A DNA stretch of 64,000 nucleotides, from positions 264,604 to 328,603 of the IMG/VR virus record IMGVR_UViG_3300044972_002389; one strand, 5' to 3'. This document shows positions 3,287 to 14,896 of this stretch, in pieces; the first letter of the stretch is position 1, and each line of letters opens with the position of its first letter. The notes under the pieces are model-generated. The model was not told the DNA's origin, did not search any database, and saw only the letters and a program-made list of their open reading frames with translations. A program made the position numbers and the translations under genes.

Positions 3287-3721
3287 ATGGCAATAAAATA
3301 CAGTCAAGGCACCTTCACACCGAAAAATCCTGGAAAAGTGGTTGGTAATCCCTCACCTACCTTCCGTAGTTCTTGGGAATTAGCATGCATGCATTTTTTT
3401 GATACTCATCCCAGCATAATTCAATGGGCTAGTGAATTTATCAAAATACCCTACAAAAACCCCTTAACAGGCAAACAAAGTCTCTATGTGCCTGATTTCC
3501 TAATTGTATATCAGGACAAAGCTGGTAACAACATAGGTGAGCTGATTGAAATCAAGCCCAAAAAAGAAACCTTGATGGAAAATGCCAAAAGCAAAAGAGA
3601 TAAAGCGTTTGTAATTGTGAATACAGCAAAATGGGCTGCTGCATTTGCTTGGGCAAATAAACAGGGTTTGAAATTTAGAGTTGTGAATGAAGACAGCATA
3701 TTCAAGCAAAAAGGCAAATAA
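3287..3721 (+). CDS. head completion nuclease (T4 gp4-like, TnsA-type PD-(D/E)XK)
   Basis: FRSSWE, WASE..IPY, YVPDF, EIKP, N.AKW.AA motifs. Confidence 0.85.
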   Translation: MAIKYSQGTFTPKNPGKVVGNPSPTFRSSWELACMHFFDTHPSIIQWASEFIKIPYKNPLTGKQSLYVPDFLIVYQDKAGNNIGELIEIKPKKETLMENAKSKRDKAFVIVNTAKWAAAFAWANKQGLKFRVVNEDSIFKQKGK

Positions 3722-4204: not shown

Positions 4205-5023
4205 ATGAAAAGTTTCAAAACATATTTGGAAGAAGCTCAAAAACAATACGACTTCCGCATCAAAATGGTGGTTCCGCCCACAGATGAGCATATGGATGAC
4301 ATGGAGCGGCTGTTAAGTAGATACAACCTCATCAGCATTGGCACTCCAGTGAAGATCTCTCCCAAGCAAGATGCTATGGAGTTCCGGGACATTGAAAATG
4401 CTGATGTTTGGTATATTGATGCTGTAATTGGCATCCCTTTCAGCGCATACATTCTTCAACAAGAACTTCGTGCTGCATTGAATATTCCTGAAAAGTTTTT
4501 GGTTGTGCGTAATGACAACGAGCCTATTGAAGTTGAAAGTCAAAAGATGCAAATCCTAAGCCTATTGGACAAAATGGCTGATGAAAAAGGTTTAACACAA
4601 AAAGCCAGCTTGTTGAGCACAGATAATGAATATCTAGATGCTGAACAGCCAGTTGTCAAAGACGCATTTGGGGACAAATACAACAAAAAATTTCTCAGTT
4701 ATCTGGCAGACGTTGCAGCTTCTCGGAAACCCCAAGAGTTTGAAACCCTCAGCAGTCACATTTCAGTTAAGGAATTGAAAGCTGCTCGGCAAGAACCCAC
4801 TCAAGACTTGGCAGATTTTAACGACAAGCATGATACACCAAAGCCTGTAACAAAATCCAAAAAATCCAACAAAATGCCAGTTGACAGCAAATTTTTGACT
4901 AGCAGTGGAAATTTTGATGACGACAGCAAGACCTACTTCACAGCACGCAAAAATCGCAGTGGGAAAACAGTAACCATGAGCATGCAAGCTGACGAAATCA
5001 GGCATCCTAGAAAAGGCAAGTAA
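4205..5023 (+). CDS. hypothetical virion/head protein
   Basis: Start MKSFKTYLEE after TAAATA at 4176; N-terminus resembles a T4-type capsid-targeting leader. Confidence 0.55.
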   Translation: MKSFKTYLEEAQKQYDFRIKMVVPPTDEHMDDMERLLSRYNLISIGTPVKISPKQDAMEFRDIENADVWYIDAVIGIPFSAYILQQELRAALNIPEKFLVVRNDNEPIEVESQKMQILSLLDKMADEKGLTQKASLLSTDNEYLDAEQPVVKDAFGDKYNKKFLSYLADVAASRKPQEFETLSSHISVKELKAARQEPTQDLADFNDKHDTPKPVTKSKKSNKMPVDSKFLTSSGNFDDDSKTYFTARKNRSGKTVTMSMQADEIRHPRKGK

Positions 5024-5025
5024 TT

Positions 5026-5766
5026 ATGGAATCAAATCGATATAATTTAACTATTTCAACCAAAGACATTCCCAGCAAGAGTGCTAGTGTTAGCACTGAC
5101 GATGCAGGTGATGTGATGAGGTTGATGCAGCTGGCTGGGCAAGGTAGTGACAAAAGATATAATGCATCAATAACATCTGCCAGTCAAAATCCCAATGATG
5201 CTGCTTCCATGACCGTAAACACTTGTGAGCCTGACGATGTTATGCGCTTGTTGCAGTTGGCTGGGGTTCCTCATATGACACAATCTAAAGCTTGTGGCTG
5301 TGATGGCCCTTGCGACTGTGATGTAGGAAAAGCTTGCGGCTGCCAAGGACCTTGCGATTGTGGAGACAGCGGCGTAGATGCCACGTCTCCAGAGGTAGTT
5401 GTTATGGAACAACAGGCTGAGTATGATTATGGCCACAAAGACCCTACTGAAGAAACTAAAGAATTTGACATAAAAGACTATAACTTCAAGGGACGTGGCG
5501 ATCTGCCTGAACGTTTGACAAATGCGCGATTTGGCAGCAATGCTTTGAAATCAGAAATGCGTGAAAGTATTCATGCCCGTTTAGTAGCAGCCTACAACGA
5601 CTTCATAAATGAAAGTGAACAGCGTGTAAATGCAGATGGTCGGGCCAGCCCTCTAACAGCTACAAAACGTGATGAGTTTTTGAAAGATCCCTACACTGAA
5701 GAACCTGACACTGACGGCAGTGAAAGCCCTTTGACTGATATCAAACGGCAACACATAAATCGATAA
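5026..5766 (+). CDS. hypothetical protein with internal duplication and Cys-rich repeats
   Basis: DVMRL(M/L)QLAG twice; KACGC(D/Q)GPCDC twice. Confidence 0.6.
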   Translation: MESNRYNLTISTKDIPSKSASVSTDDAGDVMRLMQLAGQGSDKRYNASITSASQNPNDAASMTVNTCEPDDVMRLLQLAGVPHMTQSKACGCDGPCDCDVGKACGCQGPCDCGDSGVDATSPEVVVMEQQAEYDYGHKDPTEETKEFDIKDYNFKGRGDLPERLTNARFGSNALKSEMRESIHARLVAAYNDFINESEQRVNADGRASPLTATKRDEFLKDPYTEEPDTDGSESPLTDIKRQHINR

Positions 5767-5771
5767 TTTGC

Positions 5772-6017
5772 ATGCTGATACGTCGCACGACAATAGTAAC
5801 ACTGGACATTTTTTATTATCGACCTGATTATCAACACCTGATTCAGGAATTTGTGTGGACGTTGGATGACTACGTTCCAGAATTGCAGCGAACACAAGCG
5901 TTCTTGCAATTCTGGAAACAAAATATTGATGCAGTGATAAAAGAAATATTATTGGGTGTCAGCGGAGAAACACCTCGTAAACTGGAAGCAGTTGACCATT
6001 TGTTCCGCTTGTATTAG
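5772..6017 (+). CDS. usg: Usg-family protein
   Basis: T.DIFYYRPDYQHLIQEFVW...DYVPEL...FLQFWKQNID matches the alphaproteobacterial Usg pattern (ILY.MPDHP.LLQ.YVWQ.YD..P.FP.L..FL.FW). Confidence 0.7.
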   Translation: MLIRRTTIVTLDIFYYRPDYQHLIQEFVWTLDDYVPELQRTQAFLQFWKQNIDAVIKEILLGVSGETPRKLEAVDHLFRLY

Positions 6018-6019
6018 AG

Positions 6020-7615
6020 ATGCTACAAAATAACACTGATCCAGTCCTAATAAAAAAGCCGCACCAACAGTTGCGACTGACTGCACACCAAGAGGCTGAG
6101 TTCCTCAAGTGTGCTATCAATCCCTTGTATTTTATAGACAACTACATATACATTCGACATAGCACCAAAGGCAGAGTGCCCTTCAAACTGTTTGACTATC
6201 AAAAAGACTTGGTTTTGACCTACTGGCAAAACCGCCAAGTTATAGCTATGTGCTCAAGACAGTTGGGGAAGACAGAAACAGCAGCCAGCTTCATGTTATG
6301 GTTCGCAACGTTCCAAAAAGATGTGAATATTTTGATCGCTGCCAATAATTTTCGCGCAGCTACCGAGATTATGGATCGCATCAAATTCAGTTATGAAGAA
6401 CTTCCTGACTGGTTAAAAGCTGGTGTTGTGACCTACAACGTGCAAAAGATTGTTTTTGACAACGGCAGCAAGATTGAAAGTGCTACTACCACTCCTTCAA
6501 CAGGACGTGGTAAATCCATCAGCTTGTTATATTTGGACGAGATGGCATTCGTTAAGCCTCGAATTGCTGAAGAGTTTTGGAGTGCCATCAGCCCAACTCT
6601 AGCCACTGGAGGAAAATGCATTATCACTAGCACTCCCAACAGTGATGAGGACCCATTTGCACAAATTTGGTATAGCAGTAATCGTACAATTGACGAATTT
6701 GGGAACGAACTGCCTGATGGACTGGGAGCAAATGGATTCAAAGCATTTGTTGCCAAATGGAATCAACATCCTGATCGAGACGAAGACTGGGCCAAAAAAG
6801 AGCGTGCCAAAATTGGTTATGAAAAGTTTGAGCGTGAATATGAACTGCGGTTCCTAACAGCAGACAGCACCTTGATTGACAGTCAGTGTCTAGCAGGACT
6901 GGTTTCAACTGAACCCTTGTTCAAAACCAACCATATACGATGGTGGGAAAAGCCTCAAGCCAACAACATTTATCTCATTAGCCTTGATCCATCAGCTGGC
7001 GTGGGCTTGGACTCAGCAGCTATACAAGTATGGCGATTGCCAGAAATGGCTCAGGTTGCTGAATGGATGCATAACCGCAGTGATGTTGCTACACAATTGA
7101 AAATGATTGTACAAATTACCAGCTTCATCGAACGAGAAATGCGAGCACAACCCCAGCAAATAAGCGAACCAGAAATATTCTGGACATTTGAAAACAACAG
7201 TTATGGGCAGGCTGTTATTGAACTTTTAAATGAAGCAGGATGGGACGTAGTACCAGCGCAATTGATGAGTGAACCCAATCAAAGTGGATCAAAGTTCAGG
7301 AAAGGATTGAATACAAATGGGCGCACAAAGAATCAAGCTGTAACCAAACTCAAAAGTTTGATAGAAGGCAATCGCCTCCAAATCAAGAGCAAGCCTTTGA
7401 TCTCAGAACTGAAAAACTATGTTACCAAAGGCGGAAGCTTTGCAGCCAAAAGTGGAGAACACGATGACTTGGTCAGTGCACTATTGATGATAGTAAGAAT
7501 GAGTCAGCTTATAGCAAGATGGGACGACAGCACAGCATCACAAATCAGGAATAATGATTTAGTGGAGGTTGATGATTTGATGGAGCCTTTGCCAATAGCT
7601 GTTAGCATCTGGTAA
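6020..7615 (+). CDS. terminase large subunit (T4 gp17-like)
   Basis: SRQLGKT Walker A, LLYLDEMAF Walker B, ITSTPN, nuclease LDPSAG, FENN and HDDLV motifs. Confidence 0.95.
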   Translation: MLQNNTDPVLIKKPHQQLRLTAHQEAEFLKCAINPLYFIDNYIYIRHSTKGRVPFKLFDYQKDLVLTYWQNRQVIAMCSRQLGKTETAASFMLWFATFQKDVNILIAANNFRAATEIMDRIKFSYEELPDWLKAGVVTYNVQKIVFDNGSKIESATTTPSTGRGKSISLLYLDEMAFVKPRIAEEFWSAISPTLATGGKCIITSTPNSDEDPFAQIWYSSNRTIDEFGNELPDGLGANGFKAFVAKWNQHPDRDEDWAKKERAKIGYEKFEREYELRFLTADSTLIDSQCLAGLVSTEPLFKTNHIRWWEKPQANNIYLISLDPSAGVGLDSAAIQVWRLPEMAQVAEWMHNRSDVATQLKMIVQITSFIEREMRAQPQQISEPEIFWTFENNSYGQAVIELLNEAGWDVVPAQLMSEPNQSGSKFRKGLNTNGRTKNQAVTKLKSLIEGNRLQIKSKPLISELKNYVTKGGSFAAKSGEHDDLVSALLMIVRMSQLIARWDDSTASQIRNNDLVEVDDLMEPLPIAVSIW

Positions 7616-8832: not shown

Positions 8833-9906
8833 ATGGCACTATCATTAGCTCAAATTCGTGAAAAACTACTTGAACAACAAAATTCAAAAGACCGCGCTCG
8901 TACAGGTGGCGGTGGTGGGGATAAAGCAAATTATCCCTTCTGGAGCAATCCAGACGGCAGCACAGCAACACTACGATTTCTTCCAGACGGCGATACCAGT
9001 AATGATTTCTTTTGGGTTGAACGGCTGATCACGCGTCTTCCCTTCCCAAGTATCAAAGGTCAAGCTTCAACTGGTCGTCCAATTGAAGTGCAAGTGCCTT
9101 GCGTTGACATGTGGAAGCCTGGCAGTTGCCCAATCAATGCAGAGATTCGTCCCTGGTGGAAGGGCGGCAAAGAAATGGAGGACATGGCACGCAAGTATTG
9201 GCGCAAAAAGTCATTTTTGTTCCAGGGCTTTGTGACACAGAATCCCAATCCTGAGGATCTAGCCAATCTTCCAGAAAATCCCATTCGGCGCTTTGTGATC
9301 AATCCCAGTGTGTTTGATCGCATCAAGACAGTGTTTCTTGACCAAGAGATTGAAAACAACCCCATTGACTATGACAACGGGCTGGATTTCCGTTTGGTAA
9401 AGGGGAGCAAGGGTGCGTATGCTGACTATGGTACCAGCTCTTGGGCGCGTCGTGAGCGAGCACTGAGTGACGATGAACGCTCAGCTATTGATCAATATGG
9501 GCTGTTTGCTCTCAGCAACTATCTGCCCAAGCGTCCAGATGAGGCACACATGCAGGTTATTATGGACATGTTCCATGATTCAGTTGATGAGAAGCCATAC
9601 GATCCAGACAAGTATGCACAGTTTTACAAGCCTTTTGGCCTACAAACTGATAACGACTCTGGCTCATCTATGGCACGTGATGTTGCAGGAGCAGAGAAAC
9701 GGTTTTCCAAACCATCAACTACTCCCCGTAACATTAGTGTGACAGCGCCATCAGCATCTGCTGATGTTGCTGATGCACCATTCGACGGTGCAAAAGCTGT
9801 ATCCTCAACCACTGCACCAGTTGCAGAAAGTGGAGAAGCCAAGAAGATGACGAGCCCAGAAGACATTCTGGCTGCACTACGTCGTAGGCAACAAGCCAAG
9901 GCATAA
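8833..9906 (+). CDS. single-stranded DNA-binding protein (T4 gp32-like)
   Basis: LRFLPDGD, VPC...CP, YWRKKS..FQGFV, GLDFRLVK..KG.YADY..S.W; directly upstream of uvsX. Confidence 0.85.
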   Translation: MALSLAQIREKLLEQQNSKDRARTGGGGGDKANYPFWSNPDGSTATLRFLPDGDTSNDFFWVERLITRLPFPSIKGQASTGRPIEVQVPCVDMWKPGSCPINAEIRPWWKGGKEMEDMARKYWRKKSFLFQGFVTQNPNPEDLANLPENPIRRFVINPSVFDRIKTVFLDQEIENNPIDYDNGLDFRLVKGSKGAYADYGTSSWARRERALSDDERSAIDQYGLFALSNYLPKRPDEAHMQVIMDMFHDSVDEKPYDPDKYAQFYKPFGLQTDNDSGSSMARDVAGAEKRFSKPSTTPRNISVTAPSASADVADAPFDGAKAVSSTTAPVAESGEAKKMTSPEDILAALRRRQQAKA

Positions 9907-9916
9907 TTGGCCTTAA

Positions 9917-9948
9917 GAAGGTGGAAACTAAGTTTCCACCTTCATTTT
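9917..9948 (+). terminator. intrinsic terminator-like hairpin
   Basis: GAAGGTGGAAAC-TAA-GTTTCCACCTTC followed by ATTTT. Confidence 0.6.
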
Positions 9949-9973
9949 CTCTCAAGCATAAAAAGGAACAAAT

Positions 9974-11068
9974 ATGAAACCTTTAGATTTATCCCGATTT
10001 AGAAAAGATATTGCCAAGAGCATTCCAGGACTATCAGTTGGCTTTCGCGATCCCAAGGTATGGATCTCAACAGGCAACTATGCACTCAATTATGCTATCT
10101 CTGGTAGATTCCGTGACGGTGGCATCCCGCTAGGCAAAGTAACAATGCTGGCTGGACAAAGTGGCAGTGGCAAGAGCTTTCTGGCAGCAGGAAACTTAAC
10201 CTCTAATGCACAGAAAAAAGATGTGTTTGTGGTGTTGATCGACAGTGAGAATGCACTAGATGAAAAATGGCTAAAGGCGCTAGATGTAGATACATCTGAG
10301 GACAAGCTTTTGAAGGCAAACTTGGCAATGATTGATGATGTTGCCAAGTTGATCTCAGATTTCATGAAGGACTACAAAGCTCGTTACAACAGCGTGAGTG
10401 AGGAAGAACGCCCTCGCGTGCTCTTTGTGATTGACAGTTTAGGCATGCTCCTAACTCCAACTGATGTCAATCAATTTGAGGCTGGTGAGCTCAAGGGTGA
10501 TATGGGGCGCAAGCCGCGTGCACTTGCTGCGCTTGTGCGAAATTGTGTTAACATGTTTGGTGAATATGATATCGGCATGATTTGCACAAACCACAGTTAT
10601 GCAAGCCAAGACATGTTCAATCCAGATGATGTCATTAGTGGTGGGCAAGGCCCCATCTACGCCAGCAGCATTGTGTTGGCTATGCGCAAACTCAAGCTCA
10701 AGGAAGATGAGATGGGCAACAAGACAACAGACGTCAAAGGTATCCGTGCTCAATGTCGTGTAATGAAGACGCGATATAACAAACCCTTTGAGACTGTTGA
10801 GGTTAAAATCCCATACGACCGAGGCATGGACCCCTACAGTGGCTTGTATGACCTGTTTGTTCAGAAAGGGTTGTTAGTCAAAGAAGGAAACAAGTGGTGT
10901 TACACTCGTTTGGATGGCACACAGATCAAGCAGTTTGAAAAAGCTTGGGATCGCAATGAAGATGGATGTCTTGATCAAATAATGAATGAGTTCCATCAGA
11001 AGCTAAGCAAAATTGCCCCTGTGTTAGAAGATATTGAAGTTCAAGAGCCTGAAGAAGATCTATCATAA
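9974..11068 (+). CDS. uvsX: RecA/UvsX recombinase
   Basis: ISTGNYALN, AGQSGSGKS, IDSENALD, VIDSLG, SGG motifs. Confidence 0.93.
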   Translation: MKPLDLSRFRKDIAKSIPGLSVGFRDPKVWISTGNYALNYAISGRFRDGGIPLGKVTMLAGQSGSGKSFLAAGNLTSNAQKKDVFVVLIDSENALDEKWLKALDVDTSEDKLLKANLAMIDDVAKLISDFMKDYKARYNSVSEEERPRVLFVIDSLGMLLTPTDVNQFEAGELKGDMGRKPRALAALVRNCVNMFGEYDIGMICTNHSYASQDMFNPDDVISGGQGPIYASSIVLAMRKLKLKEDEMGNKTTDVKGIRAQCRVMKTRYNKPFETVEVKIPYDRGMDPYSGLYDLFVQKGLLVKEGNKWCYTRLDGTQIKQFEKAWDRNEDGCLDQIMNEFHQKLSKIAPVLEDIEVQEPEEDLS

Positions 11069-11089
11069 CTTCCAATACATAGCAGTGCA

Positions 11090-11124
11090 AAGAGCGGGAC
11101 AAAATGTCCCGCTCTCATTGTTTT
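11090..11124 (+). terminator. hairpin separating uvsX from the bL33/RlmN cassette
   Basis: AGAGCGGGAC-AAAAT-GTCCCGCTCT followed by CATTGTTTT. Confidence 0.55.
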
Positions 11125-11167
11125 GAGCTGATTGCCATATATAATCACGCATAGCAGGAGACACAGG

Positions 11168-11359
11168 ATGGCAAAAGCAGCAACCGTAATTGTAATGTTG
11201 GTAAATCAAGACCATGATACACCAACCAAATACATGACGCATGTTACTACAAAAGGTGCAAAGTCTAGTGAAAAGTTGCGTCTGAAGAAGTATGACCCAG
11301 TGGTACAAAAACATTGTAACTTTGGTCAAAAAAAACTACCTTCGCCCAAATCCCGTTAA
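11168..11359 (+). CDS. rpmG: 50S ribosomal protein bL33 homolog (no Zn-ribbon)
   Basis: MAKAATVIVMLV...EKLRLKKYDPVVQKHCNF.QKK matches bL33 (MAKA.T.KI.L...K...KKYDP..+KHV.F.E.K); SD AGGAG at 11156-11160. Confidence 0.85.
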   Translation: MAKAATVIVMLVNQDHDTPTKYMTHVTTKGAKSSEKLRLKKYDPVVQKHCNFGQKKLPSPKSR

Positions 11360-11376
11360 CCAGAAAGTTTCAACGT

Positions 11377-12222
11377 ATGTTACAACAGATCAACTCGCAA
11401 CTGGATGCGAGTGTAAATTTTGTTGAGCAACAGCTGACAGGATTTATTGAGTCGCGTTATGTAAGACGTCAAGCTGACTATTTCATCGCGTATCTCAGTT
11501 CACAAACTGGCTGTAACCGTGGATGCCAAATGTGTCATCTCACTGCAACCAAACAAACACAATTTTCGAATCTGGACCAAAGTGATTTTGTCAGTCAGTT
11601 TGAAACTGTATTGTCTCATTATGAAAAAGACACTCCTGCGCAAACAGTGCACTTGAATTTCATGGCCCGGGGAGAGCCGCTAGCCAATACCACGATAACC
11701 AAAACTGGAACAGAACTTTTTTGGCGACTGGGTAACATGGCACGAGACCGAGGACTGCGAGTAAAATTCAACGTGTCTACCATTATGCCAGTAACGCTCA
11801 AAAAAAGCCTGTGTGAAGTGTTCCCTCTTATCCCGGCGAATGTGTATTACTCCATATATTCAATAAATTCTTCATTTAGAAACAAATGGTTACCAGCTGC
11901 GATGCCAGTAGAGCGTGCGCTAGCTAATCTCAAGGAATATCAACAAGTTTCAAAAAAGATCATCAAGTTTCACGGTGCATTTATCAAGGGCGAAAATGAC
12001 AGTGAACAAGATGTTGAAGAGCTGATGAACACCATTGCTGAATACAGTTTTCACAGTGAGTTCAACATTGTGAGATACAATCCCTATAGCAGTCAACAGG
12101 GTGAAGAAAGTCTACGGGTGGATGACATAGCTGCACAAATCCAGCAATATATGCCCTGTAAGATTATTCCGAAAGTTGGTCAAGACGTATATGCAAGTTG
12201 CGGCCAATTTGTACCCAAGTAA
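11377..12222 (+). CDS. RlmN/Cfr-like radical SAM protein
   Basis: SSQTGCNRGCQMC (CX3CX2C), FMARGEPLAN (cf. MGMGEP), C-terminal DVYASCGQF (cf. DI.AACGQL). Confidence 0.85.
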   Translation: MLQQINSQLDASVNFVEQQLTGFIESRYVRRQADYFIAYLSSQTGCNRGCQMCHLTATKQTQFSNLDQSDFVSQFETVLSHYEKDTPAQTVHLNFMARGEPLANTTITKTGTELFWRLGNMARDRGLRVKFNVSTIMPVTLKKSLCEVFPLIPANVYYSIYSINSSFRNKWLPAAMPVERALANLKEYQQVSKKIIKFHGAFIKGENDSEQDVEELMNTIAEYSFHSEFNIVRYNPYSSQQGEESLRVDDIAAQIQQYMPCKIIPKVGQDVYASCGQFVPK

Positions 12223-12261
12223 CCTTTAAATAACCCCAGATTTTTTGTGGAGATCAAACTA

Positions 12262-12480
12262 ATGGAAATTGATGCAAAACTAATTGCAGAGCTTTGGGAA
12301 ACAGTCAAGGACTTGATTCCCTCTGGCAAGCGAGACGATGTGGCACTGGAATTCATCAGTGTTTTTGAAGAAAATGATGTAGAGATTCATGATCTTGACT
12401 CACTGCGTGGTGCAGATGACAGCCTTGATTCTGCCCTTGATGAACTCTATGGAGATGTTGACGTAGACGACGACTGCTAG
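12262..12480 (+). CDS. small acidic hypothetical protein
   Basis: After TAAATA at 12227; SD GGAG. Confidence 0.55.
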   Translation: MEIDAKLIAELWETVKDLIPSGKRDDVALEFISVFEENDVEIHDLDSLRGADDSLDSALDELYGDVDVDDDC

Positions 12481-12491
12481 TATCAATTGTC

Positions 12492-12944
12492 ATGTGGTTT
12501 AACAGAGTAAAAAACGACCTATCGCAAATTCCTGATATGGTCGACTACTACAACAATGAGCTTGAGGTTGCTCAAAAAGAATGCAAGGTTTTTGGCAGCC
12601 TTGAAAAAAACAGTCAAGAGCTGCCAGGTCAGGTAAGTTGGCGTTTCAGTCAACTGCAAGAGATTGAGGCTGTGTTGAAACATCTCAACAACCAAGTGGA
12701 CAAAATGAGAAGCGACTTTTATCGTCGCTATCTCGAACGCTACAACAGAGAATTGAGTGACCGCGCCATTGAAAAATACATTGATGGCGAGGCTGATGTT
12801 CAAACAATGATGAGTCTAGTGAATGAGGTGGCATTGATTCGCAACAAGTATCTTGGTGTAATCAAGTCAATGGAGATCAAGGGTTTTCAACTTAACAATA
12901 TCATACGCCTTAGGTCTGTGGGTATGAATGATATTGCGCTCTAA
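12492..12944 (+). CDS. uvsY: recombination mediator UvsY-like
   Basis: Y.R.LS.RAIEKYIDGEADV...K.LE.KGFQLNNI.RLR pattern; close to uvsX. Confidence 0.75.
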   Translation: MWFNRVKNDLSQIPDMVDYYNNELEVAQKECKVFGSLEKNSQELPGQVSWRFSQLQEIEAVLKHLNNQVDKMRSDFYRRYLERYNRELSDRAIEKYIDGEADVQTMMSLVNEVALIRNKYLGVIKSMEIKGFQLNNIIRLRSVGMNDIAL

Positions 12945-13252
12945 CTCCCACAGACTTCATCCCGCAAGATCTGTTCCATCTCATCTGGAGTTACTTGGCC
13001 ACATTCCAACACAGTGTAGAGCTGGGCTAGCTTATGGCCCCAGCTTTCATCATGCCTGTTGAGACAGTCAACAGTTTCTGCCATTTTGGTGACCAATATA
13101 TTTTGACTTGTCCAAAGCTGCTCTAAAGCACTCACACTGCCTTTTAGTAAGCTGATCAATTCAGTCTGGGACAGTGTGTTTTCCTTCTCTAATGAGTTCT
13201 TCAAATGGGTCAAAAAATCATTTGGGTTATCAAACATCAAAACTTTGTTCAT
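12941..13252 (-). CDS. hypothetical protein
   Basis: 103-aa ORF filling the gap. Confidence 0.5.
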   Translation of the reverse strand: MNKVLMFDNPNDFLTHLKNSLEKENTLSQTELISLLKGSVSALEQLWTSQNILVTKMAETVDCLNRHDESWGHKLAQLYTVLECGQVTPDEMEQILRDEVCGS

Positions 13253-13310
13253 ATGAAAATTATGAAAGATCTATTTTGGGTTTGTCTATTGAAACCATTA
13301 CACTCCCTGC

Positions 13311-14123
13311 ATGATCAAATTATTTTTTGCTATCTCAGCTCTTATATTCTCACTTAGTGATGCCTATGCTCAACAAACGCCGCCAAGGCCTATGGAGGCA
13401 TGTCAATCAGAAGCGCCGTGGGGGTTTCCCACTGCCAATTTACCCACTGGCCAACCCATCTGTCGCATGGCTTATGCGTTATTGCACGACAATAGGGCAA
13501 AGATACCATTATGGACTGTCTATACGATTACGCCTGAAAAGGCCATGGGGTGTGGAAAGAGAAGTGATGCATTCTCTCCAGACCAAAGCTTGCCTCGTGG
13601 TGAGCGAGCTGAATTGGGCGACTATCGACAATCAGGATATGACACTGGTCACATGGTGAATTCAGCCGATATGTTGTGGAGTGTTACTGCTGAGCGTGAG
13701 AGTTTCATCCTCAGCAATATGAGCCCGCAATTGGCTAATGTAAACCGCGGTGCGTGGAAAACTCTAGAGACTGGTATCAGAGGATGGACCCAACAGACTA
13801 ATGATACCTATACCGTTTACAGCGGAAACATTTATGATGTGATGACTGCCAAAACCATTGGCCGCAATGCAGTAGTAGTGCCCAACAGCCTCTGGAAGGT
13901 TGTTGTAAGCCATCGCACTGGCGAGGCGTGGGCTTTTCTTTTTCCCAATCAACCCAACATCTCTACAGAACTCAAAAGCTTCCAGGTCACAGTAGTTGAA
14001 CTGGAATCTCTTGTGGGATATGAAATTCCCATGCCAGGCGATAAAACTGCTAAACCCTTCTTACTTCCTGTTCGATCTGTAAGTGAGGCTCGGCAAGCAG
14101 CTTGTACTTTGCCTCAGAGGTAA
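13311..14123 (+). CDS. DNA/RNA non-specific endonuclease (NucA/EndoG family) with signal peptide
   Basis: SGYDTGHM, ESF.LSNMSPQ...NRG.W..LE motifs; hydrophobic N-terminus ending AYA. Confidence 0.88.
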   Translation: MIKLFFAISALIFSLSDAYAQQTPPRPMEACQSEAPWGFPTANLPTGQPICRMAYALLHDNRAKIPLWTVYTITPEKAMGCGKRSDAFSPDQSLPRGERAELGDYRQSGYDTGHMVNSADMLWSVTAERESFILSNMSPQLANVNRGAWKTLETGIRGWTQQTNDTYTVYSGNIYDVMTAKTIGRNAVVVPNSLWKVVVSHRTGEAWAFLFPNQPNISTELKSFQVTVVELESLVGYEIPMPGDKTAKPFLLPVRSVSEARQAACTLPQR

Positions 14124-14843
14124 TTACACCTTATCCCAAAAGGTCAAAACTGCTGACCGGGCAGAACTCAGTCGCATACCAGCAGCAACAGCCTTTTGAA
14201 TAATGTCAGATTGAGACGCACCTTGGGGCTTATGTGTGCGGATCCATTCCCGGATCCTAGCCGCATAAGATCCATCCTTCTGAGAAGGGATCTTGGTGGT
14301 TGTATTTCCAGAGACATCAATCCCTGGAATAATTTGTTTACGCCAATTGCAACTCCGATCAATCCACCCCTTGGCCTTGAATCGGTACTTATGGCCCTTC
14401 TGCACCTTTGTGTGTCTATGAGCCGAGATCACCACTTCTTGCCCAGTGGAGGTAGTGTAGTGGTAGTTTCCGCCAGAGTATGTGGTTTTGTAGCTGTGGT
14501 AGATGCTGCCATTACCTCCCAGTGCTACACAAACCCTCTTCCAACCCTGGTCATGATCCCGGCCCAAACTGGGGTTCATGAAACACACGATGTGCGCCAC
14601 CTCATGTGCTGTGGCATTTTGTAGCACATCATCAAACTCAGACCCTTGGATAACCTGTTGGTTGAAATGCACAGAATACTTACGAGTGAACGTGCGCTGG
14701 CAAATCCGGCAGCAGGCCTTTCCAGCCTTCATCCCTCGAAGGTCAAAGCGAATCGCAGTCTGCCGCAAATTCAAGCCATACAGCTGATCAGCAAGCTCAA
14801 AAAGGCTGTGCACCTTTTGAGTCATCTGTGCCAAGCGATCCAT
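14124..14843 (-). CDS. SprT-like zinc metalloprotease
   Basis: F.LRG.KAG, HEVAH, H..GWK.V motifs. Confidence 0.8.
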   Translation of the reverse strand: MDRLAQMTQKVHSLFELADQLYGLNLRQTAIRFDLRGMKAGKACCRICQRTFTRKYSVHFNQQVIQGSEFDDVLQNATAHEVAHIVCFMNPSLGRDHDQGWKRVCVALGGNGSIYHSYKTTYSGGNYHYTTSTGQEVVISAHRHTKVQKGHKYRFKAKGWIDRSCNWRKQIIPGIDVSGNTTTKIPSQKDGSYAARIREWIRTHKPQGASQSDIIQKAVAAGMRLSSARSAVLTFWDKV

Positions 14844-14868
14844 ACTCACAGTCCCTTGTTTGCCCAGC

Positions 14869-14896
14869 AATGTAGCTGAATTTGCGACGCTGTCAA
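14869..14896 (-). promoter_or_regulatory. host sigma70-type early promoter (alphaproteobacterial type)
   Basis: TTGACA-N14-GCTACATT on the minus strand; similar elements near 15358-15385(-), 15642-15670(+) and 15963-15990(+). Confidence 0.55.

What the first reader, a model, noticed from the sequence alone, without database searches (positions are those of the whole stretch)
11377..12222. RlmN-like protein keeps the methyl-carrier Cys but lacks the adduct-resolving Cys
Seen: the CX3CX2C motif (C46/C50/C53) and the C-terminal ASCGQ Cys275 (equivalent to E. coli C355) are present. The position equivalent to C118 (CVSSQVGC) reads YLSSQTGC, i.e. Tyr39. MGMGEP has become MARGEP and the N-terminal helical domain is absent. 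Established: RlmN C118 mutants accumulate a covalent protein-RNA crosslink. Inference: this enzyme may attach permanently to rRNA or tRNA (a suicide inhibitor), use a different resolving residue, or catalyse different chemistry.
Basis: partly seen in the sequence, partly recalled or inferred. Interest (0 to 1): 0.75.

Follow-up and report, generated by a model that had tools for sequence, protein, structure and literature searches.

The report
Phage RlmN-like enzyme with tyrosine swap
This freshwater jumbo-phage gene belongs to a large, uncharacterised sister family of the RNA methylases RlmN and Cfr that always has a tyrosine where those enzymes need a cysteine to release their RNA substrate, so it must finish its reaction differently or do different chemistry.

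Summary
ORF 11377-12222 (+, 281 aa) is a radical SAM protein with the cluster motif at C46/C50/C53 and the C-terminal Cys275 aligned to E. coli RlmN C355. Tyr39 sits at the C118 position, MARGEP replaces MGMGEP, and there is no N-terminal HhH2 domain.

The tyrosine is a family trait, not a one-off loss. It is invariant in 120/120 close homologues and 151/151 representatives of 50%-identity clusters. Cys275 is present in 150/151, and there is no fifth conserved Cys.

The family (phrog_27142) has at least 430 clusters at E<=1e-30. It is mostly in jumbo phages, including 201phi2-1, Phabio, Psa21, CcrColossus and Brevundimonas phages. One derived clade sits on Planctomycetota and Myxococcota chromosomes.

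It scores far below the RlmN and Cfr family cutoffs, yet RlmN is its best structural match (TM 0.77).

Gene contexts vary: DNA replication and repair genes, RtcB, and ribosomal protein L33 in this phage. They do not fix the substrate.

Best reading: an active class-A-like radical SAM enzyme that uses Tyr39 as a substitute resolving residue. The suicide-crosslinker idea is not supported but not excluded. This is a new variant of a known kind, and it is biochemically testable.

The parts
11377..12222 (+). Radical SAM gene (281 aa). It is a member of phrog_27142 and a Tyr-for-Cys sister family of RlmN/Cfr.
   Evidence: ORF. phrog_27142 E 1.2e-90, full length. RlmN TIGR00048 at 63 bits against a cutoff of 290; Cfr models at 48-54 bits against cutoffs of 468-550. 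AF2 model pLDDT 89.2. Best fold matches are RlmN 5hr6/3rfa at TM 0.77.
11491..11493 (+). Tyr39 codon, at the position of RlmN C118 and Cfr C105 (the crosslink-resolving Cys).
   Evidence: Alignments. Invariant in 120/120 and 151/151 sequences.
11512..11544 (+). CX3CX2C [4Fe-4S]/SAM cluster motif (C46, C50, C53), followed by the family-specific H54-L55-T56 insertion.
   Evidence: Sequence. The three Cys are invariant, L55 and T56 are invariant, and H54 is present in 129/151 (W or F in the rest).
11662..11679 (+). MARGEP motif, the counterpart of RlmN M176-P181 (MGMGEP). Arg98 replaces Met178.
   Evidence: Sequence. M96 149/151, R98 146/151, G99 151/151. The review places M176 next to the C355 thiyl radical.
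12178..12207 (+). C-terminal mobile loop G268-x-D270-x-x-A273-S274-C275-G276-Q277, carrying Cys275, the counterpart of the methyl-carrier C355 (RlmN) and C338 (Cfr).
   Evidence: Alignment to Cfr G331..C338 has identical spacing. C275 is present in 150/151, G268 and G276 are invariant. The AF2 model has low confidence here, as expected for a mobile loop.
11168..11359 (+). Ribosomal protein bL33 gene (63 aa from the MAK start), 18 nt upstream of the rSAM gene and probably co-transcribed with it.
   Evidence: Pfam PF00471 at 29.2 bits against a cutoff of 25. A gene caller gives 63 aa. No terminator-like site lies between it and the rSAM. It is adjacent to the rSAM in 13 of 80 viral loci, in two gene orders.
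11091..11115 (+). Terminator-like hairpin (11-bp stem) after uvsX, separating uvsX from the L33-rSAM unit.

Best explanation
The gene encodes an active radical SAM enzyme from a distinct, ancient and mostly jumbo-phage-borne sister family of the class A methylases RlmN and Cfr.

It keeps the RlmN core. That means the [4Fe-4S]/SAM site, the beta-sheet extension, and the mobile C-terminal loop with the methyl-carrier cysteine (Cys275).

It has lost the HhH2 RNA-anchoring domain. It has also remodelled the active site around an invariant Tyr39, together with Arg98, Tyr161, His199 and the His-Leu-Thr insertion after the cluster motif.

The most likely mechanism (inferred, not shown) is as follows:
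1. Cys275 is methylated by a first SAM.
2. A 5'-deoxyadenosyl radical from a second SAM abstracts an H atom from the S-methyl group.
3. [quoted passage not shown]
4. The transient protein-nucleic acid adduct is resolved by Tyr39 acting as the proton acceptor or PCET partner in place of Cys118. Arg98 or His199 probably tunes its pKa.

On this reading the enzyme turns over and is not consumed.

The substrate is not the RlmN-style 23S or tRNA complex recognised through the HhH2 domain. Which nucleic acid it acts on remains open.
For: - Homology and fold. RlmN and Cfr are the only significant characterised relatives. RlmN gives TM 0.77 and Cfr 0.63, well ahead of other radical SAM folds.
- Retained machinery. 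The three cluster Cys, M96/G99/E100 of the SAM motif, N207-D208, N235 and the GxDxxA(S)CG loop are conserved, with the same spacing as Cfr's adenine-binding loop.
- Catalytic-type conservation. Y39 is 151/151 and C275 is 150/151, with no fifth conserved Cys.
- Co-variation. The one true RlmN caught in the set has C/M/H/E where the family has Y39/R98/Y161/H199.
- Selection. The family has at least 430 clusters of 50% identity at E<=1e-30 and 1780 proteins at E<=1e-5. It is spread over Pseudomonas, Caulobacter and Brevundimonas jumbo phages and over bacterial chromosomes.
- Mechanistic plausibility. The resolving Cys is now viewed as a general base rather than a disulfide partner, and it points straight at the target carbon. 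Another acid-base residue could in principle take over that role.
- Nucleic-acid-related contexts throughout.
Against: - There are no biochemical data for any member, and I found no paper on the family.
- In Cfr, the C-beta of residue 105 lies only 3.6 A from the target carbon. A Tyr side chain cannot occupy the same geometry, so the substrate pose must differ, and Tyr may instead stack on the base or serve another role.
- Tyrosine is a poorer base than a thiolate unless it is activated.
- I could not measure Tyr39-Cys275-SAM distances because model coordinates are not exposed.
- Gene neighbourhoods are heterogeneous and do not single out a substrate.
- There is no expression evidence.
Confidence: 0.4

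Rival explanations
1. Different radical chemistry or a different substrate class. The enzyme acts on DNA or on a nucleotide as part of the phage replication, recombination or repair module. Alternatively, it uses Cys275 and Tyr39 as a hydrogen-atom relay (as Cys and Tyr do in spore photoproduct lyase) and not as methyl carrier and base.
For: - In divergent lineages the gene overlapping or abutting the rSAM start is SbcC/Rad50-like, NAD-dependent DNA ligase, RecA/UvsX, DnaB-like helicase or an AlkB-type dioxygenase.
- Neighbour tallies also include ThyA, RNR, an exonuclease, Nmad5, PolA, primase, dUTPase and dCTP deaminase.
- In this window the gene lies between gp32/UvsX and UvsY.
- The RNA-anchoring HhH2 domain is absent.
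- Cfr Ser103, which contacts the ribose hydroxyls, aligns to Ile/Val37.
- The Cys/Tyr relay in spore photoproduct lyase is from my own knowledge.
Against: - Spore photoproduct lyase is no closer in fold than generic radical SAM enzymes (rank 33, TM 0.54).
- The methyl-carrier loop is conserved in RlmN/Cfr style.
- DNA-metabolism genes make up a large share of the annotatable genes in any jumbo phage, and I computed no background frequency.
- A hairpin separates uvsX from the L33-rSAM unit in this window.
- I found no report of C-methyladenine in phage DNA.
Confidence: 0.25
2. Suicide crosslinker. Without the resolving Cys, the enzyme ends covalently attached through Cys275-CH2 to its RNA target, acting as a stoichiometric inhibitor or toxin.
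For: - C118A RlmN and C105A/S Cfr accumulate exactly such an adduct.
- Cys275 and the radical machinery are intact.
- In one bacterial clade the gene is divergently paired with an AbiEii abortive-infection toxin.
Against: - Trapping needs only loss of the thiol (Ala or Ser suffice), yet Tyr is invariant in 151/151 clusters and co-varies with Arg98 and His199. That points to a positive role.
- Phages depend on host translation and carry the gene without any partner.
- The AbiEii link is confined to one clade. Its other neighbours (LRR/TIGR02996 protein, sulfotransferase, sulfatase) look like lineage synteny.
- The complex prediction gave no answer.
Confidence: 0.1
3. Translation-directed RNA methylase working with phage bL33. 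The enzyme modifies host tRNA (A37-like) or rRNA to retune or protect translation during infection.
For: - The only characterised relatives methylate tRNA A37 and 23S A2503.
- bL33 is adjacent in three sublineages and in two gene orders. The L33 copies are 69-75% identical and the rSAM copies 65%, so the pair stayed together through a rearrangement.
- L33 and the rSAM form one predicted transcription unit here.
- RtcB lies two genes downstream in four Pseudomonas-phage lineages.
- A CCA-adding enzyme lies about 2 kb downstream in CcrColossus and Gurke.
- bL33 contacts E-site tRNA (PMC6375957).
Against: - L33 is present beside only 13 of 80 viral loci.
- This phage has no tRNA genes and no RtcB.
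- The HhH2 domain that anchors both RlmN and Cfr to RNA is missing.
- This overlaps with the best explanation. It differs only in naming the substrate.
Confidence: 0.2
4. An ordinary RlmN/Cfr orthologue whose resolving Cys is merely displaced in the alignment, or an inactive relic.
For: Automatic annotations in several sources call members RlmN or 23S rRNA (adenine2503-C2)-methyltransferase.
Against: - Scores are 63 bits against a cutoff of 290 (RlmN) and about 50 against 468-550 (Cfr).
- Only four Cys are conserved in the whole family.
- The SSQxGC context fixes the register, so Y39 aligns to C118 without ambiguity.
- Strong purifying selection across more than 400 divergent clusters argues against a relic.
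Confidence: 0.03

Closest known systems
RlmN (dual-specificity 23S rRNA A2503 / tRNA A37 C2-methylase; class A radical SAM methylase; PDB 3RFA, 5HR6/5HR7)
   Same: - Radical SAM core plus beta-sheet extension; best fold match at TM 0.77.
- CX3CX2C motif and an M-x-x-G-E-P SAM motif.
- The conserved Glu (E25 = E105) and N235 = N312.
- A mobile C-terminal loop with the methyl-carrier Cys (C275 = C355).
   Different: - Tyr39 in place of the resolving Cys118, and Arg98 in place of Met178.
- Y161 for H235 and H199 for E278.
- An HLT insertion after the third cluster Cys.
- No HhH2 N-terminal domain, and the chain ends 6 residues after the carrier Cys.
- Only 18-21% identity, and 63 bits against the TIGR00048 cutoff of 290.
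Cfr (23S rRNA A2503 C8-methylase; PDB 9P0P and the cryo-EM crosslinked complex)
   Same: - Best sequence match among solved structures (E 3e-10).
- Shares the RYNP motif and a GxDxxAxCG loop of identical spacing.
- Same two-SAM ping-pong architecture expected.
   Different: - Tyr39 instead of Cys105.
- No N-terminal domain.
- Ribose-contacting Ser103 aligns to Ile37, and Tyr97 to Arg31.
- 48-54 bits against cutoffs of 468-550.
- There is no evidence that it confers antibiotic resistance.
phrog_27142 ('Fe-S-cluster redox domain-containing'): 201phi2-1 gp434, CcrColossus gp283, Phabio, Psa21 and Brevundimonas jumbo-phage proteins
   Same: Full-length match at E 1.2e-90. 40-43% identity to these phage proteins, with the same Tyr, Cys and motifs.
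   Different: None in kind; this is the family the gene belongs to. The family has no assigned function, and its members are variously annotated as hypothetical, RlmN or a generic methyltransferase.
Klebsiella phage 05F01 gene_104-type radical SAM proteins (26% identity)
   Same: They share the CHLT insertion and the C-terminal SSCGMF carrier-Cys loop, and they lack the N-terminal domain.
   Different: Val at the Tyr39 position and a Cys three residues later (LSCSHGC). This is possibly a relocated resolving Cys. I did not follow it up.

Membership tests
Class A radical SAM methylases (RlmN/Cfr) | CX3CX2C motif binding the [4Fe-4S]/SAM cluster within a radical SAM core | tested here: met
   C46/C50/C53 are invariant. 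Pfam Radical_SAM E 1.9e-4. RS fold confirmed.
Class A radical SAM methylases (RlmN/Cfr) | Conserved C-terminal methyl-carrier Cys (RlmN C355 / Cfr C338) on a mobile loop | tested here: met
   C275 aligns to C355/C338 in the A(S)CGQ context. Present in 150/151 representatives.
Class A radical SAM methylases (RlmN/Cfr) | Second conserved Cys (RlmN C118 / Cfr C105) that resolves the covalent adduct; the class is defined as using 'two conserved cysteine residues' (PMC9692996) | tested here: not met
   Tyr39 occupies the position in 151/151 representatives, and no other conserved Cys exists.
Class A radical SAM methylases (RlmN/Cfr) | N-terminal HhH2 RNA-binding domain (Pfam RlmN_N) | tested here: not met
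   The protein starts at the beta-sheet extension and aligns to RlmN from about residue 83. The model has no helix before residue 54. The domain's role is described.
Class A radical SAM methylases (RlmN/Cfr) | Score above the curated family thresholds (TIGR00048, NF008396, NF000424, TIGR04432) | tested here: not met
   63.4 bits against 290; 42.5 against 633; 53.7 against 530; 48.5 against 550.
Class A radical SAM methylases (RlmN/Cfr) | Catalyses C2 or C8 methylation of adenosine in rRNA or tRNA through an S-methylcysteine intermediate | not testable with these tools
   This needs anaerobic reconstitution, MS of Cys275 and nucleoside analysis.
phrog_27142 (phage Fe-S-cluster redox domain-containing proteins) | Full-length match to the family profile | tested here: met
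   E 1.2e-90, residues 4-279 on profile positions 8-299 of 300.
Spore photoproduct lyase-like radical SAM repair enzymes | Specific fold or sequence similarity to SPL beyond the generic radical SAM core | tested here: not met
   SPL (4fhf/4fhe) ranks 33-35 at TM 0.54, behind many unrelated RS enzymes. No SPL model hit in NCBIfam or Pfam.
AbiE-type abortive infection / toxin-antitoxin module | An AbiEii nucleotidyltransferase encoded next to the gene | tested here: not met
   No AbiEii homologue in the window's 328.6 kb genome or in 80 viral loci. It is present only in one bacterial clade. The rSAM matches no PADLOC model.
Ribosomal protein bL33 (neighbouring gene 11168-11359) | Pfam PF00471 above the gathering threshold | tested here: met
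   29.2-29.7 bits against a cutoff of 25.

The most novel reading that the evidence does not exclude
This would be a natural Cys-to-Tyr class-A-like radical SAM family that does something RlmN and Cfr cannot. One possibility is radical C-alkylation or repair of DNA, nucleotides or damaged tRNA, as part of jumbo-phage takeover or counter-defence. Another is deliberate formation of a stable Cys-CH2-base adduct (or even an intramolecular Cys-CH2-Tyr adduct) as its functional end state. Either would add a new mechanistic branch to radical SAM methylases and a new phage-host interaction.
Probability: 0.3. Interest if true: 0.85.

Novelty: new variant of a known kind. Interest (0 to 1): 0.7.

Why it matters
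Class A radical SAM methylases are defined by two catalytic cysteines, and the second one is considered indispensable for releasing the RNA. Here nature has replaced it with an invariant tyrosine, in a family of hundreds of divergent clusters that jumbo phages from soil, plant, freshwater and wastewater hosts have kept.

If the enzyme turns over, it shows that a non-thiol residue can resolve the methylene-bridged adduct. That bears directly on the unsettled question of whether C118 acts purely as a base or also forms a sulfur-centred radical species.

If it does not turn over, it is a natural covalent nucleic-acid trap.

Either way, current database names (RlmN, 23S rRNA methyltransferase) are probably wrong for more than a thousand phage proteins. 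Culturable phages such as 201phi2-1, Phabio, Psa21 and CcrColossus make the question directly testable.

Tried and rejected
2. Model coordinates are not exposed to the Python box. I could not measure Tyr39, Cys275, SAM or Arg98 distances, or superpose the model on 5HR7.
3. Conserved-neighbour search across 80 viral loci found no partner family-wide. Pfam tallies gave a DNA and nucleotide-metabolism theme plus RtcB, but no single operon.
4. The AbiEii lead. The neighbour is strongly identified but restricted to one Myxococcota/Planctomycetota clade. It is absent from phage loci and from this genome. Its other neighbours look like lineage synteny (LRR/TIGR02996, sulfotransferase, sulfatase). The rSAM-AbiEii complex prediction returned 'no answer', so I use it neither for nor against.
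5. N-terminally extended family members carry no recognisable fused domain. They are probably over-called starts.
6. Net charge and pI of the family (median about 7) do not differ from RlmN.
7. Expression. No RNA run holds the gene. The one candidate run held only relatives' scraps and is probably DNA.
8. Seven literature searches found nothing on this family, on C-methyladenine in phage DNA, or on rSAM-AbiE links.
9. The Pseudomonas megaplasmid record could not be opened in the plasmid collection.
10. I rejected the ordinary-RlmN and inactive-relic readings, for the reasons given under rival explanations.
Full report
**What is there**

The ORF at 11377..12222 (+) encodes 281 aa.
- Tyr39 (TAT, 11491-11493) in YLSSQTGC.
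- C46/C50/C53 (11512-11535).
- MARGEP (11662-11679).
- Cys275 (TGC, 12199-12201) in ASCGQ, six residues from the C-terminus.

The window lies at 264604-328603 of a 328.6 kb virus record, CheckV completeness 77%. That makes it a jumbo phage. The stretch around the gene (window 9900-13300) recurs in at least 20 lake-water metagenomes from 2020-2024. One DNA run carries the stretch without any difference in a 51.9 kb contig.

**Relationship to known families**

Pfam sees only a sub-threshold Radical_SAM match. NCBIfam's best hits are RlmN (TIGR00048, E 1.7e-17, 63 bits, cutoff 290) and the Cfr models (48-54 bits, cutoffs 468-550). So the protein is a relative, not an orthologue.

PHROGs gives a full-length match to phrog_27142, which has no assigned function (E 1.2e-90). 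Among solved structures, only Cfr 9p0p (E 3e-10) and an RlmN (6fz6, E 1.4e-8) match by sequence. Those alignments put Y39 opposite Cfr C105, and C275 opposite Cfr C338.

A MAFFT alignment with E. coli RlmN (fetched) gives these equivalences:
- Y39 = C118
- C46/50/53 = C125/129/132
- M96-P101 = M176-P181
- C275 = C355

An AlphaFold2 model built on a 37-sequence alignment is confident (pLDDT 89.2, pTM 0.87). It begins with four beta strands and has no N-terminal helical domain. Foldseek ranks RlmN structures first (5hr6/3rfa, TM 0.77), then Cfr (0.63), then generic radical SAM enzymes. AlphaFold DB clusters return only RlmN-like cellular proteins at 17-25% identity.

**The tyrosine is a family trait**

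The large protein collection holds 1780 homologues at E<=1e-5, many on contigs of 250-500 kb. A profile search of 1.84 billion cluster representatives finds 430 clusters at E<=1e-30.

Conservation across these sets:
- Y39 is invariant in 120/120 close homologues.
- Y39 is invariant in 151/151 sequences: 150 representatives of 50%-identity clusters plus the window protein.
- C275 is present in 150/151.
- The three cluster Cys are invariant.
- No other column is Cys-rich.
- The window protein's C146 and C261 are variable positions.

Residues that distinguish the family from RlmN are also nearly invariant:
- R98 (Met178 in RlmN)
- Y161 (His235)
- H199 (Glu278)
- Y157/Y158
- W171
- R27
- The H54-L55-T56 insertion after the third cluster Cys
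- An N-terminal S7-x-x-D10-x-S12-V-N14 hairpin

The single true RlmN that slipped into the cellular set has C/M/H/E at the four signature positions. This shows that they switch together.

**Established mechanism, for comparison**

Class A radical SAM methylases are defined as using two conserved cysteines. C355/C338 carries the methyl group. C118/C105 abstracts the C2/C8 proton of the covalent adduct, triggering radical fragmentation. C118A and C105A/S variants trap the protein-RNA crosslink. The resolving Cys points straight at the target carbon; in Cfr, the C-beta of residue 105 is 3.6 A from C8. M176 of the MGMGEP motif lies next to the C355 thiyl radical. The HhH2 N-terminal domain anchors the RNA backbone. 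(Sources: PMC9692996; bioRxiv 10.64898/2026.02.27.707579.)

The phage family therefore fails two defining features, the second Cys and the N-terminal domain. It keeps the radical machinery, the carrier Cys, and a GxDxxAxCG loop with the same spacing as the Cfr loop whose backbone reads adenine N1/N6.

**Distribution**

Cultured carriers are jumbo phages: Pseudomonas phages 201phi2-1 (gp434), Phabio, Psa21, D6, RVTF4 and Viktualia; Caulobacter phages CcrColossus (gp283) and CcrPW; and eight Brevundimonas phages. All are about 40-43% identical to the window protein. ESM Atlas clusters for the family are 75-89% viral.

The family also occurs in 76 loci of bacterial genome assemblies. These include complete Planctomycetota and Myxococcota chromosomes and Pseudomonas megaplasmids of about 1 Mb.

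A quick maximum-likelihood tree of 118 sequences places the Myxococcota and Planctomycetota copies in one well-supported clade (SH-aLRT 99), nested among mostly viral branches. The careful tree search did not finish. All groups keep Y39 and C275.

**Gene context**

In this window the order is:
- gp32-like SSB (8833-9906)
- hairpin
- UvsX/RecA (9974-11068)
- hairpin (11091-11115)
- bL33 (11168-11359)
- rSAM
- a very acidic protein of 72-77 aa
- UvsY-like (12492-12944)
- a non-specific endonuclease
- SprT-like

No terminator-like site separates L33 from the rSAM, so they are probably co-transcribed.

L33 flanks the rSAM in 13 of 80 related viral loci. It lies upstream in the close relatives and immediately downstream in a lineage whose rSAM is 65% identical. 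The L33 copies are 69-75% identical, so the pair stayed adjacent through a rearrangement. Phage-encoded bL33 is itself already known from aquatic viral contigs (PMC6375957).

Across 48 dereplicated viral lineages no neighbour is universal. The gene abutting or overlapping the rSAM start is variously SbcC/Rad50-like, NAD-dependent DNA ligase, RecA/UvsX, DnaB-like helicase, an AlkB-type dioxygenase or a PfkB kinase.

Tallies add ThyA, RNR, an exonuclease and Nmad5 upstream. Downstream they add RtcB (four lineages), PolA, primase, dUTPase and dCTP deaminase. In CcrColossus and Gurke a tRNA nucleotidyltransferase lies about 2 kb downstream. A 512 kb phage contig has FtsH and RF-1 a few kb upstream.

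The window's phage has no tRNA genes and no RtcB.

The theme is nucleic-acid metabolism and repair, but it does not separate DNA from RNA. I computed no background frequency.

**The bacterial clade**

In about 33 Myxococcota and Planctomycetota loci the rSAM is divergently paired with an AbiEii nucleotidyltransferase toxin gene (Pfam E 2e-16; PADLOC E about 1e-48, full length). An LRR/TIGR02996 protein and a probable sulfotransferase follow.

This is one clade-level association. It is absent from phage loci and from this genome. The further neighbours look like lineage synteny. The rSAM-AbiEii complex prediction returned 'no answer'. I record it as a lead, not as evidence of function.

**Interpretation**

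Shown:
- A distinct, strongly conserved and mainly viral sister family of RlmN/Cfr.
- Tyr for the resolving Cys, Arg for Met178, and no HhH2 domain.
- Intact radical SAM machinery and carrier Cys.

Inferred:
- The enzyme is active and most likely still uses S-methyl-Cys275 to deliver a methylene radical to an sp2 carbon of a nucleobase.
- Tyr39 takes over proton abstraction, and possibly thiyl-radical quenching, tuned by Arg98 or His199.
- Because a Tyr side chain cannot sit 3-4 A from the target carbon as Cys does, the substrate pose, and perhaps the substrate itself, must differ from RlmN and Cfr.

The suicide-crosslinker idea explains the missing Cys but not the strict requirement for Tyr. 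A non-methylating Cys/Tyr radical-relay or a DNA- or nucleotide-directed activity remains a serious rival, given the contexts.

No literature on the family was found.

**Verdict**

The feature is a new variant of a known kind, widespread, mis-annotated in databases, and directly testable in culturable phages.

Noticed in passing
window 11168-11359 (+): A phage-encoded ribosomal protein bL33 (63 aa, C-minus type, pI 10) lies 18 nt upstream of the rSAM. The pair is adjacent in three sublineages and in two gene orders. Sister lineages with the same gp32-UvsX-rSAM-UvsY synteny lack it.
   Followed up: partly
window 12247/12262-12480 (+): A very acidic small protein (72-77 aa, pI 4.05, net charge -19) sits between the rSAM and the UvsY-like gene. 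It is conserved in 18 of 80 related loci and has no Pfam match.
   Followed up: partly
window 9917-9943 and 11091-11115 (+): Strong terminator-like hairpins (12-bp and 11-bp stems) lie directly after the gp32-like and uvsX genes. They partition the recombination cluster into separate units.
   Followed up: no
window 13311-14123 (+) and 14124-14870 (-): A DNA/RNA non-specific endonuclease (Pfam E 1.7e-46) has a hydrophobic, signal-peptide-like N-terminus. It lies back to back with a SprT-like metalloprotease-family gene. A SprT-like gene also lies near the rSAM in an unrelated 325 kb contig (L165).
   Followed up: no
L090, L096, L125, L131 and about 30 other bacterial loci (e.g. L125:3516-6876): In Myxococcota and Planctomycetota chromosomes the rSAM is divergently paired with a full-length AbiEii toxin gene lacking a recognisable AbiEi antitoxin. 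The AbiEii gene overlaps the start of an LRR/TIGR02996 protein gene by 4 nt, and a probable sulfotransferase follows.
   Followed up: partly
L004:3929-4858 (Klebsiella phage 05F01 gene_104): A 26%-identical relative shares the CHLT insertion and the terminal SSCGMF loop. It has Val at the Tyr39 position and a Cys three residues later. It lies between an ADP-ribosylation gene and the anaerobic ribonucleotide reductase genes. It may be a relative in which the resolving residue has moved.
   Followed up: no
ESM Atlas structural neighbours (row 5): A 491-aa Bacillota cluster carries cytidine/deoxycytidylate deaminase domains (PF00383, PF14437). Its model aligns over 275 residues (TM 0.87) with the model of the Atlas's top feature hit for the query, not with the query's own model. 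It may be a deaminase fused to an RlmN-like core. The sequence was not retrievable.
   Followed up: no
L164:2753-5771 (512 kb viral contig): A huge-phage contig carrying a family member also encodes an FtsH-like protease and a peptide chain release factor (PCRF/RF-1) 2-5 kb upstream of the rSAM.
   Followed up: no
window 9900-13300: This stretch is held at 94-100% of sampled words by at least 20 lake-water metagenome runs (2020-2024) under 20 different study codes. The phage is a widespread freshwater jumbo phage whose host I did not identify.
   Followed up: partly
L163:1911-2345 and 4644-6239 (window about 3287-3721 and 6020-7615): A Tn7 TnsA-like N-terminal domain protein and the large terminase lie a few kb upstream of the recombination cluster. 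A WYL_2 protein and an AAA_16 (faint) protein lie downstream.
   Followed up: no
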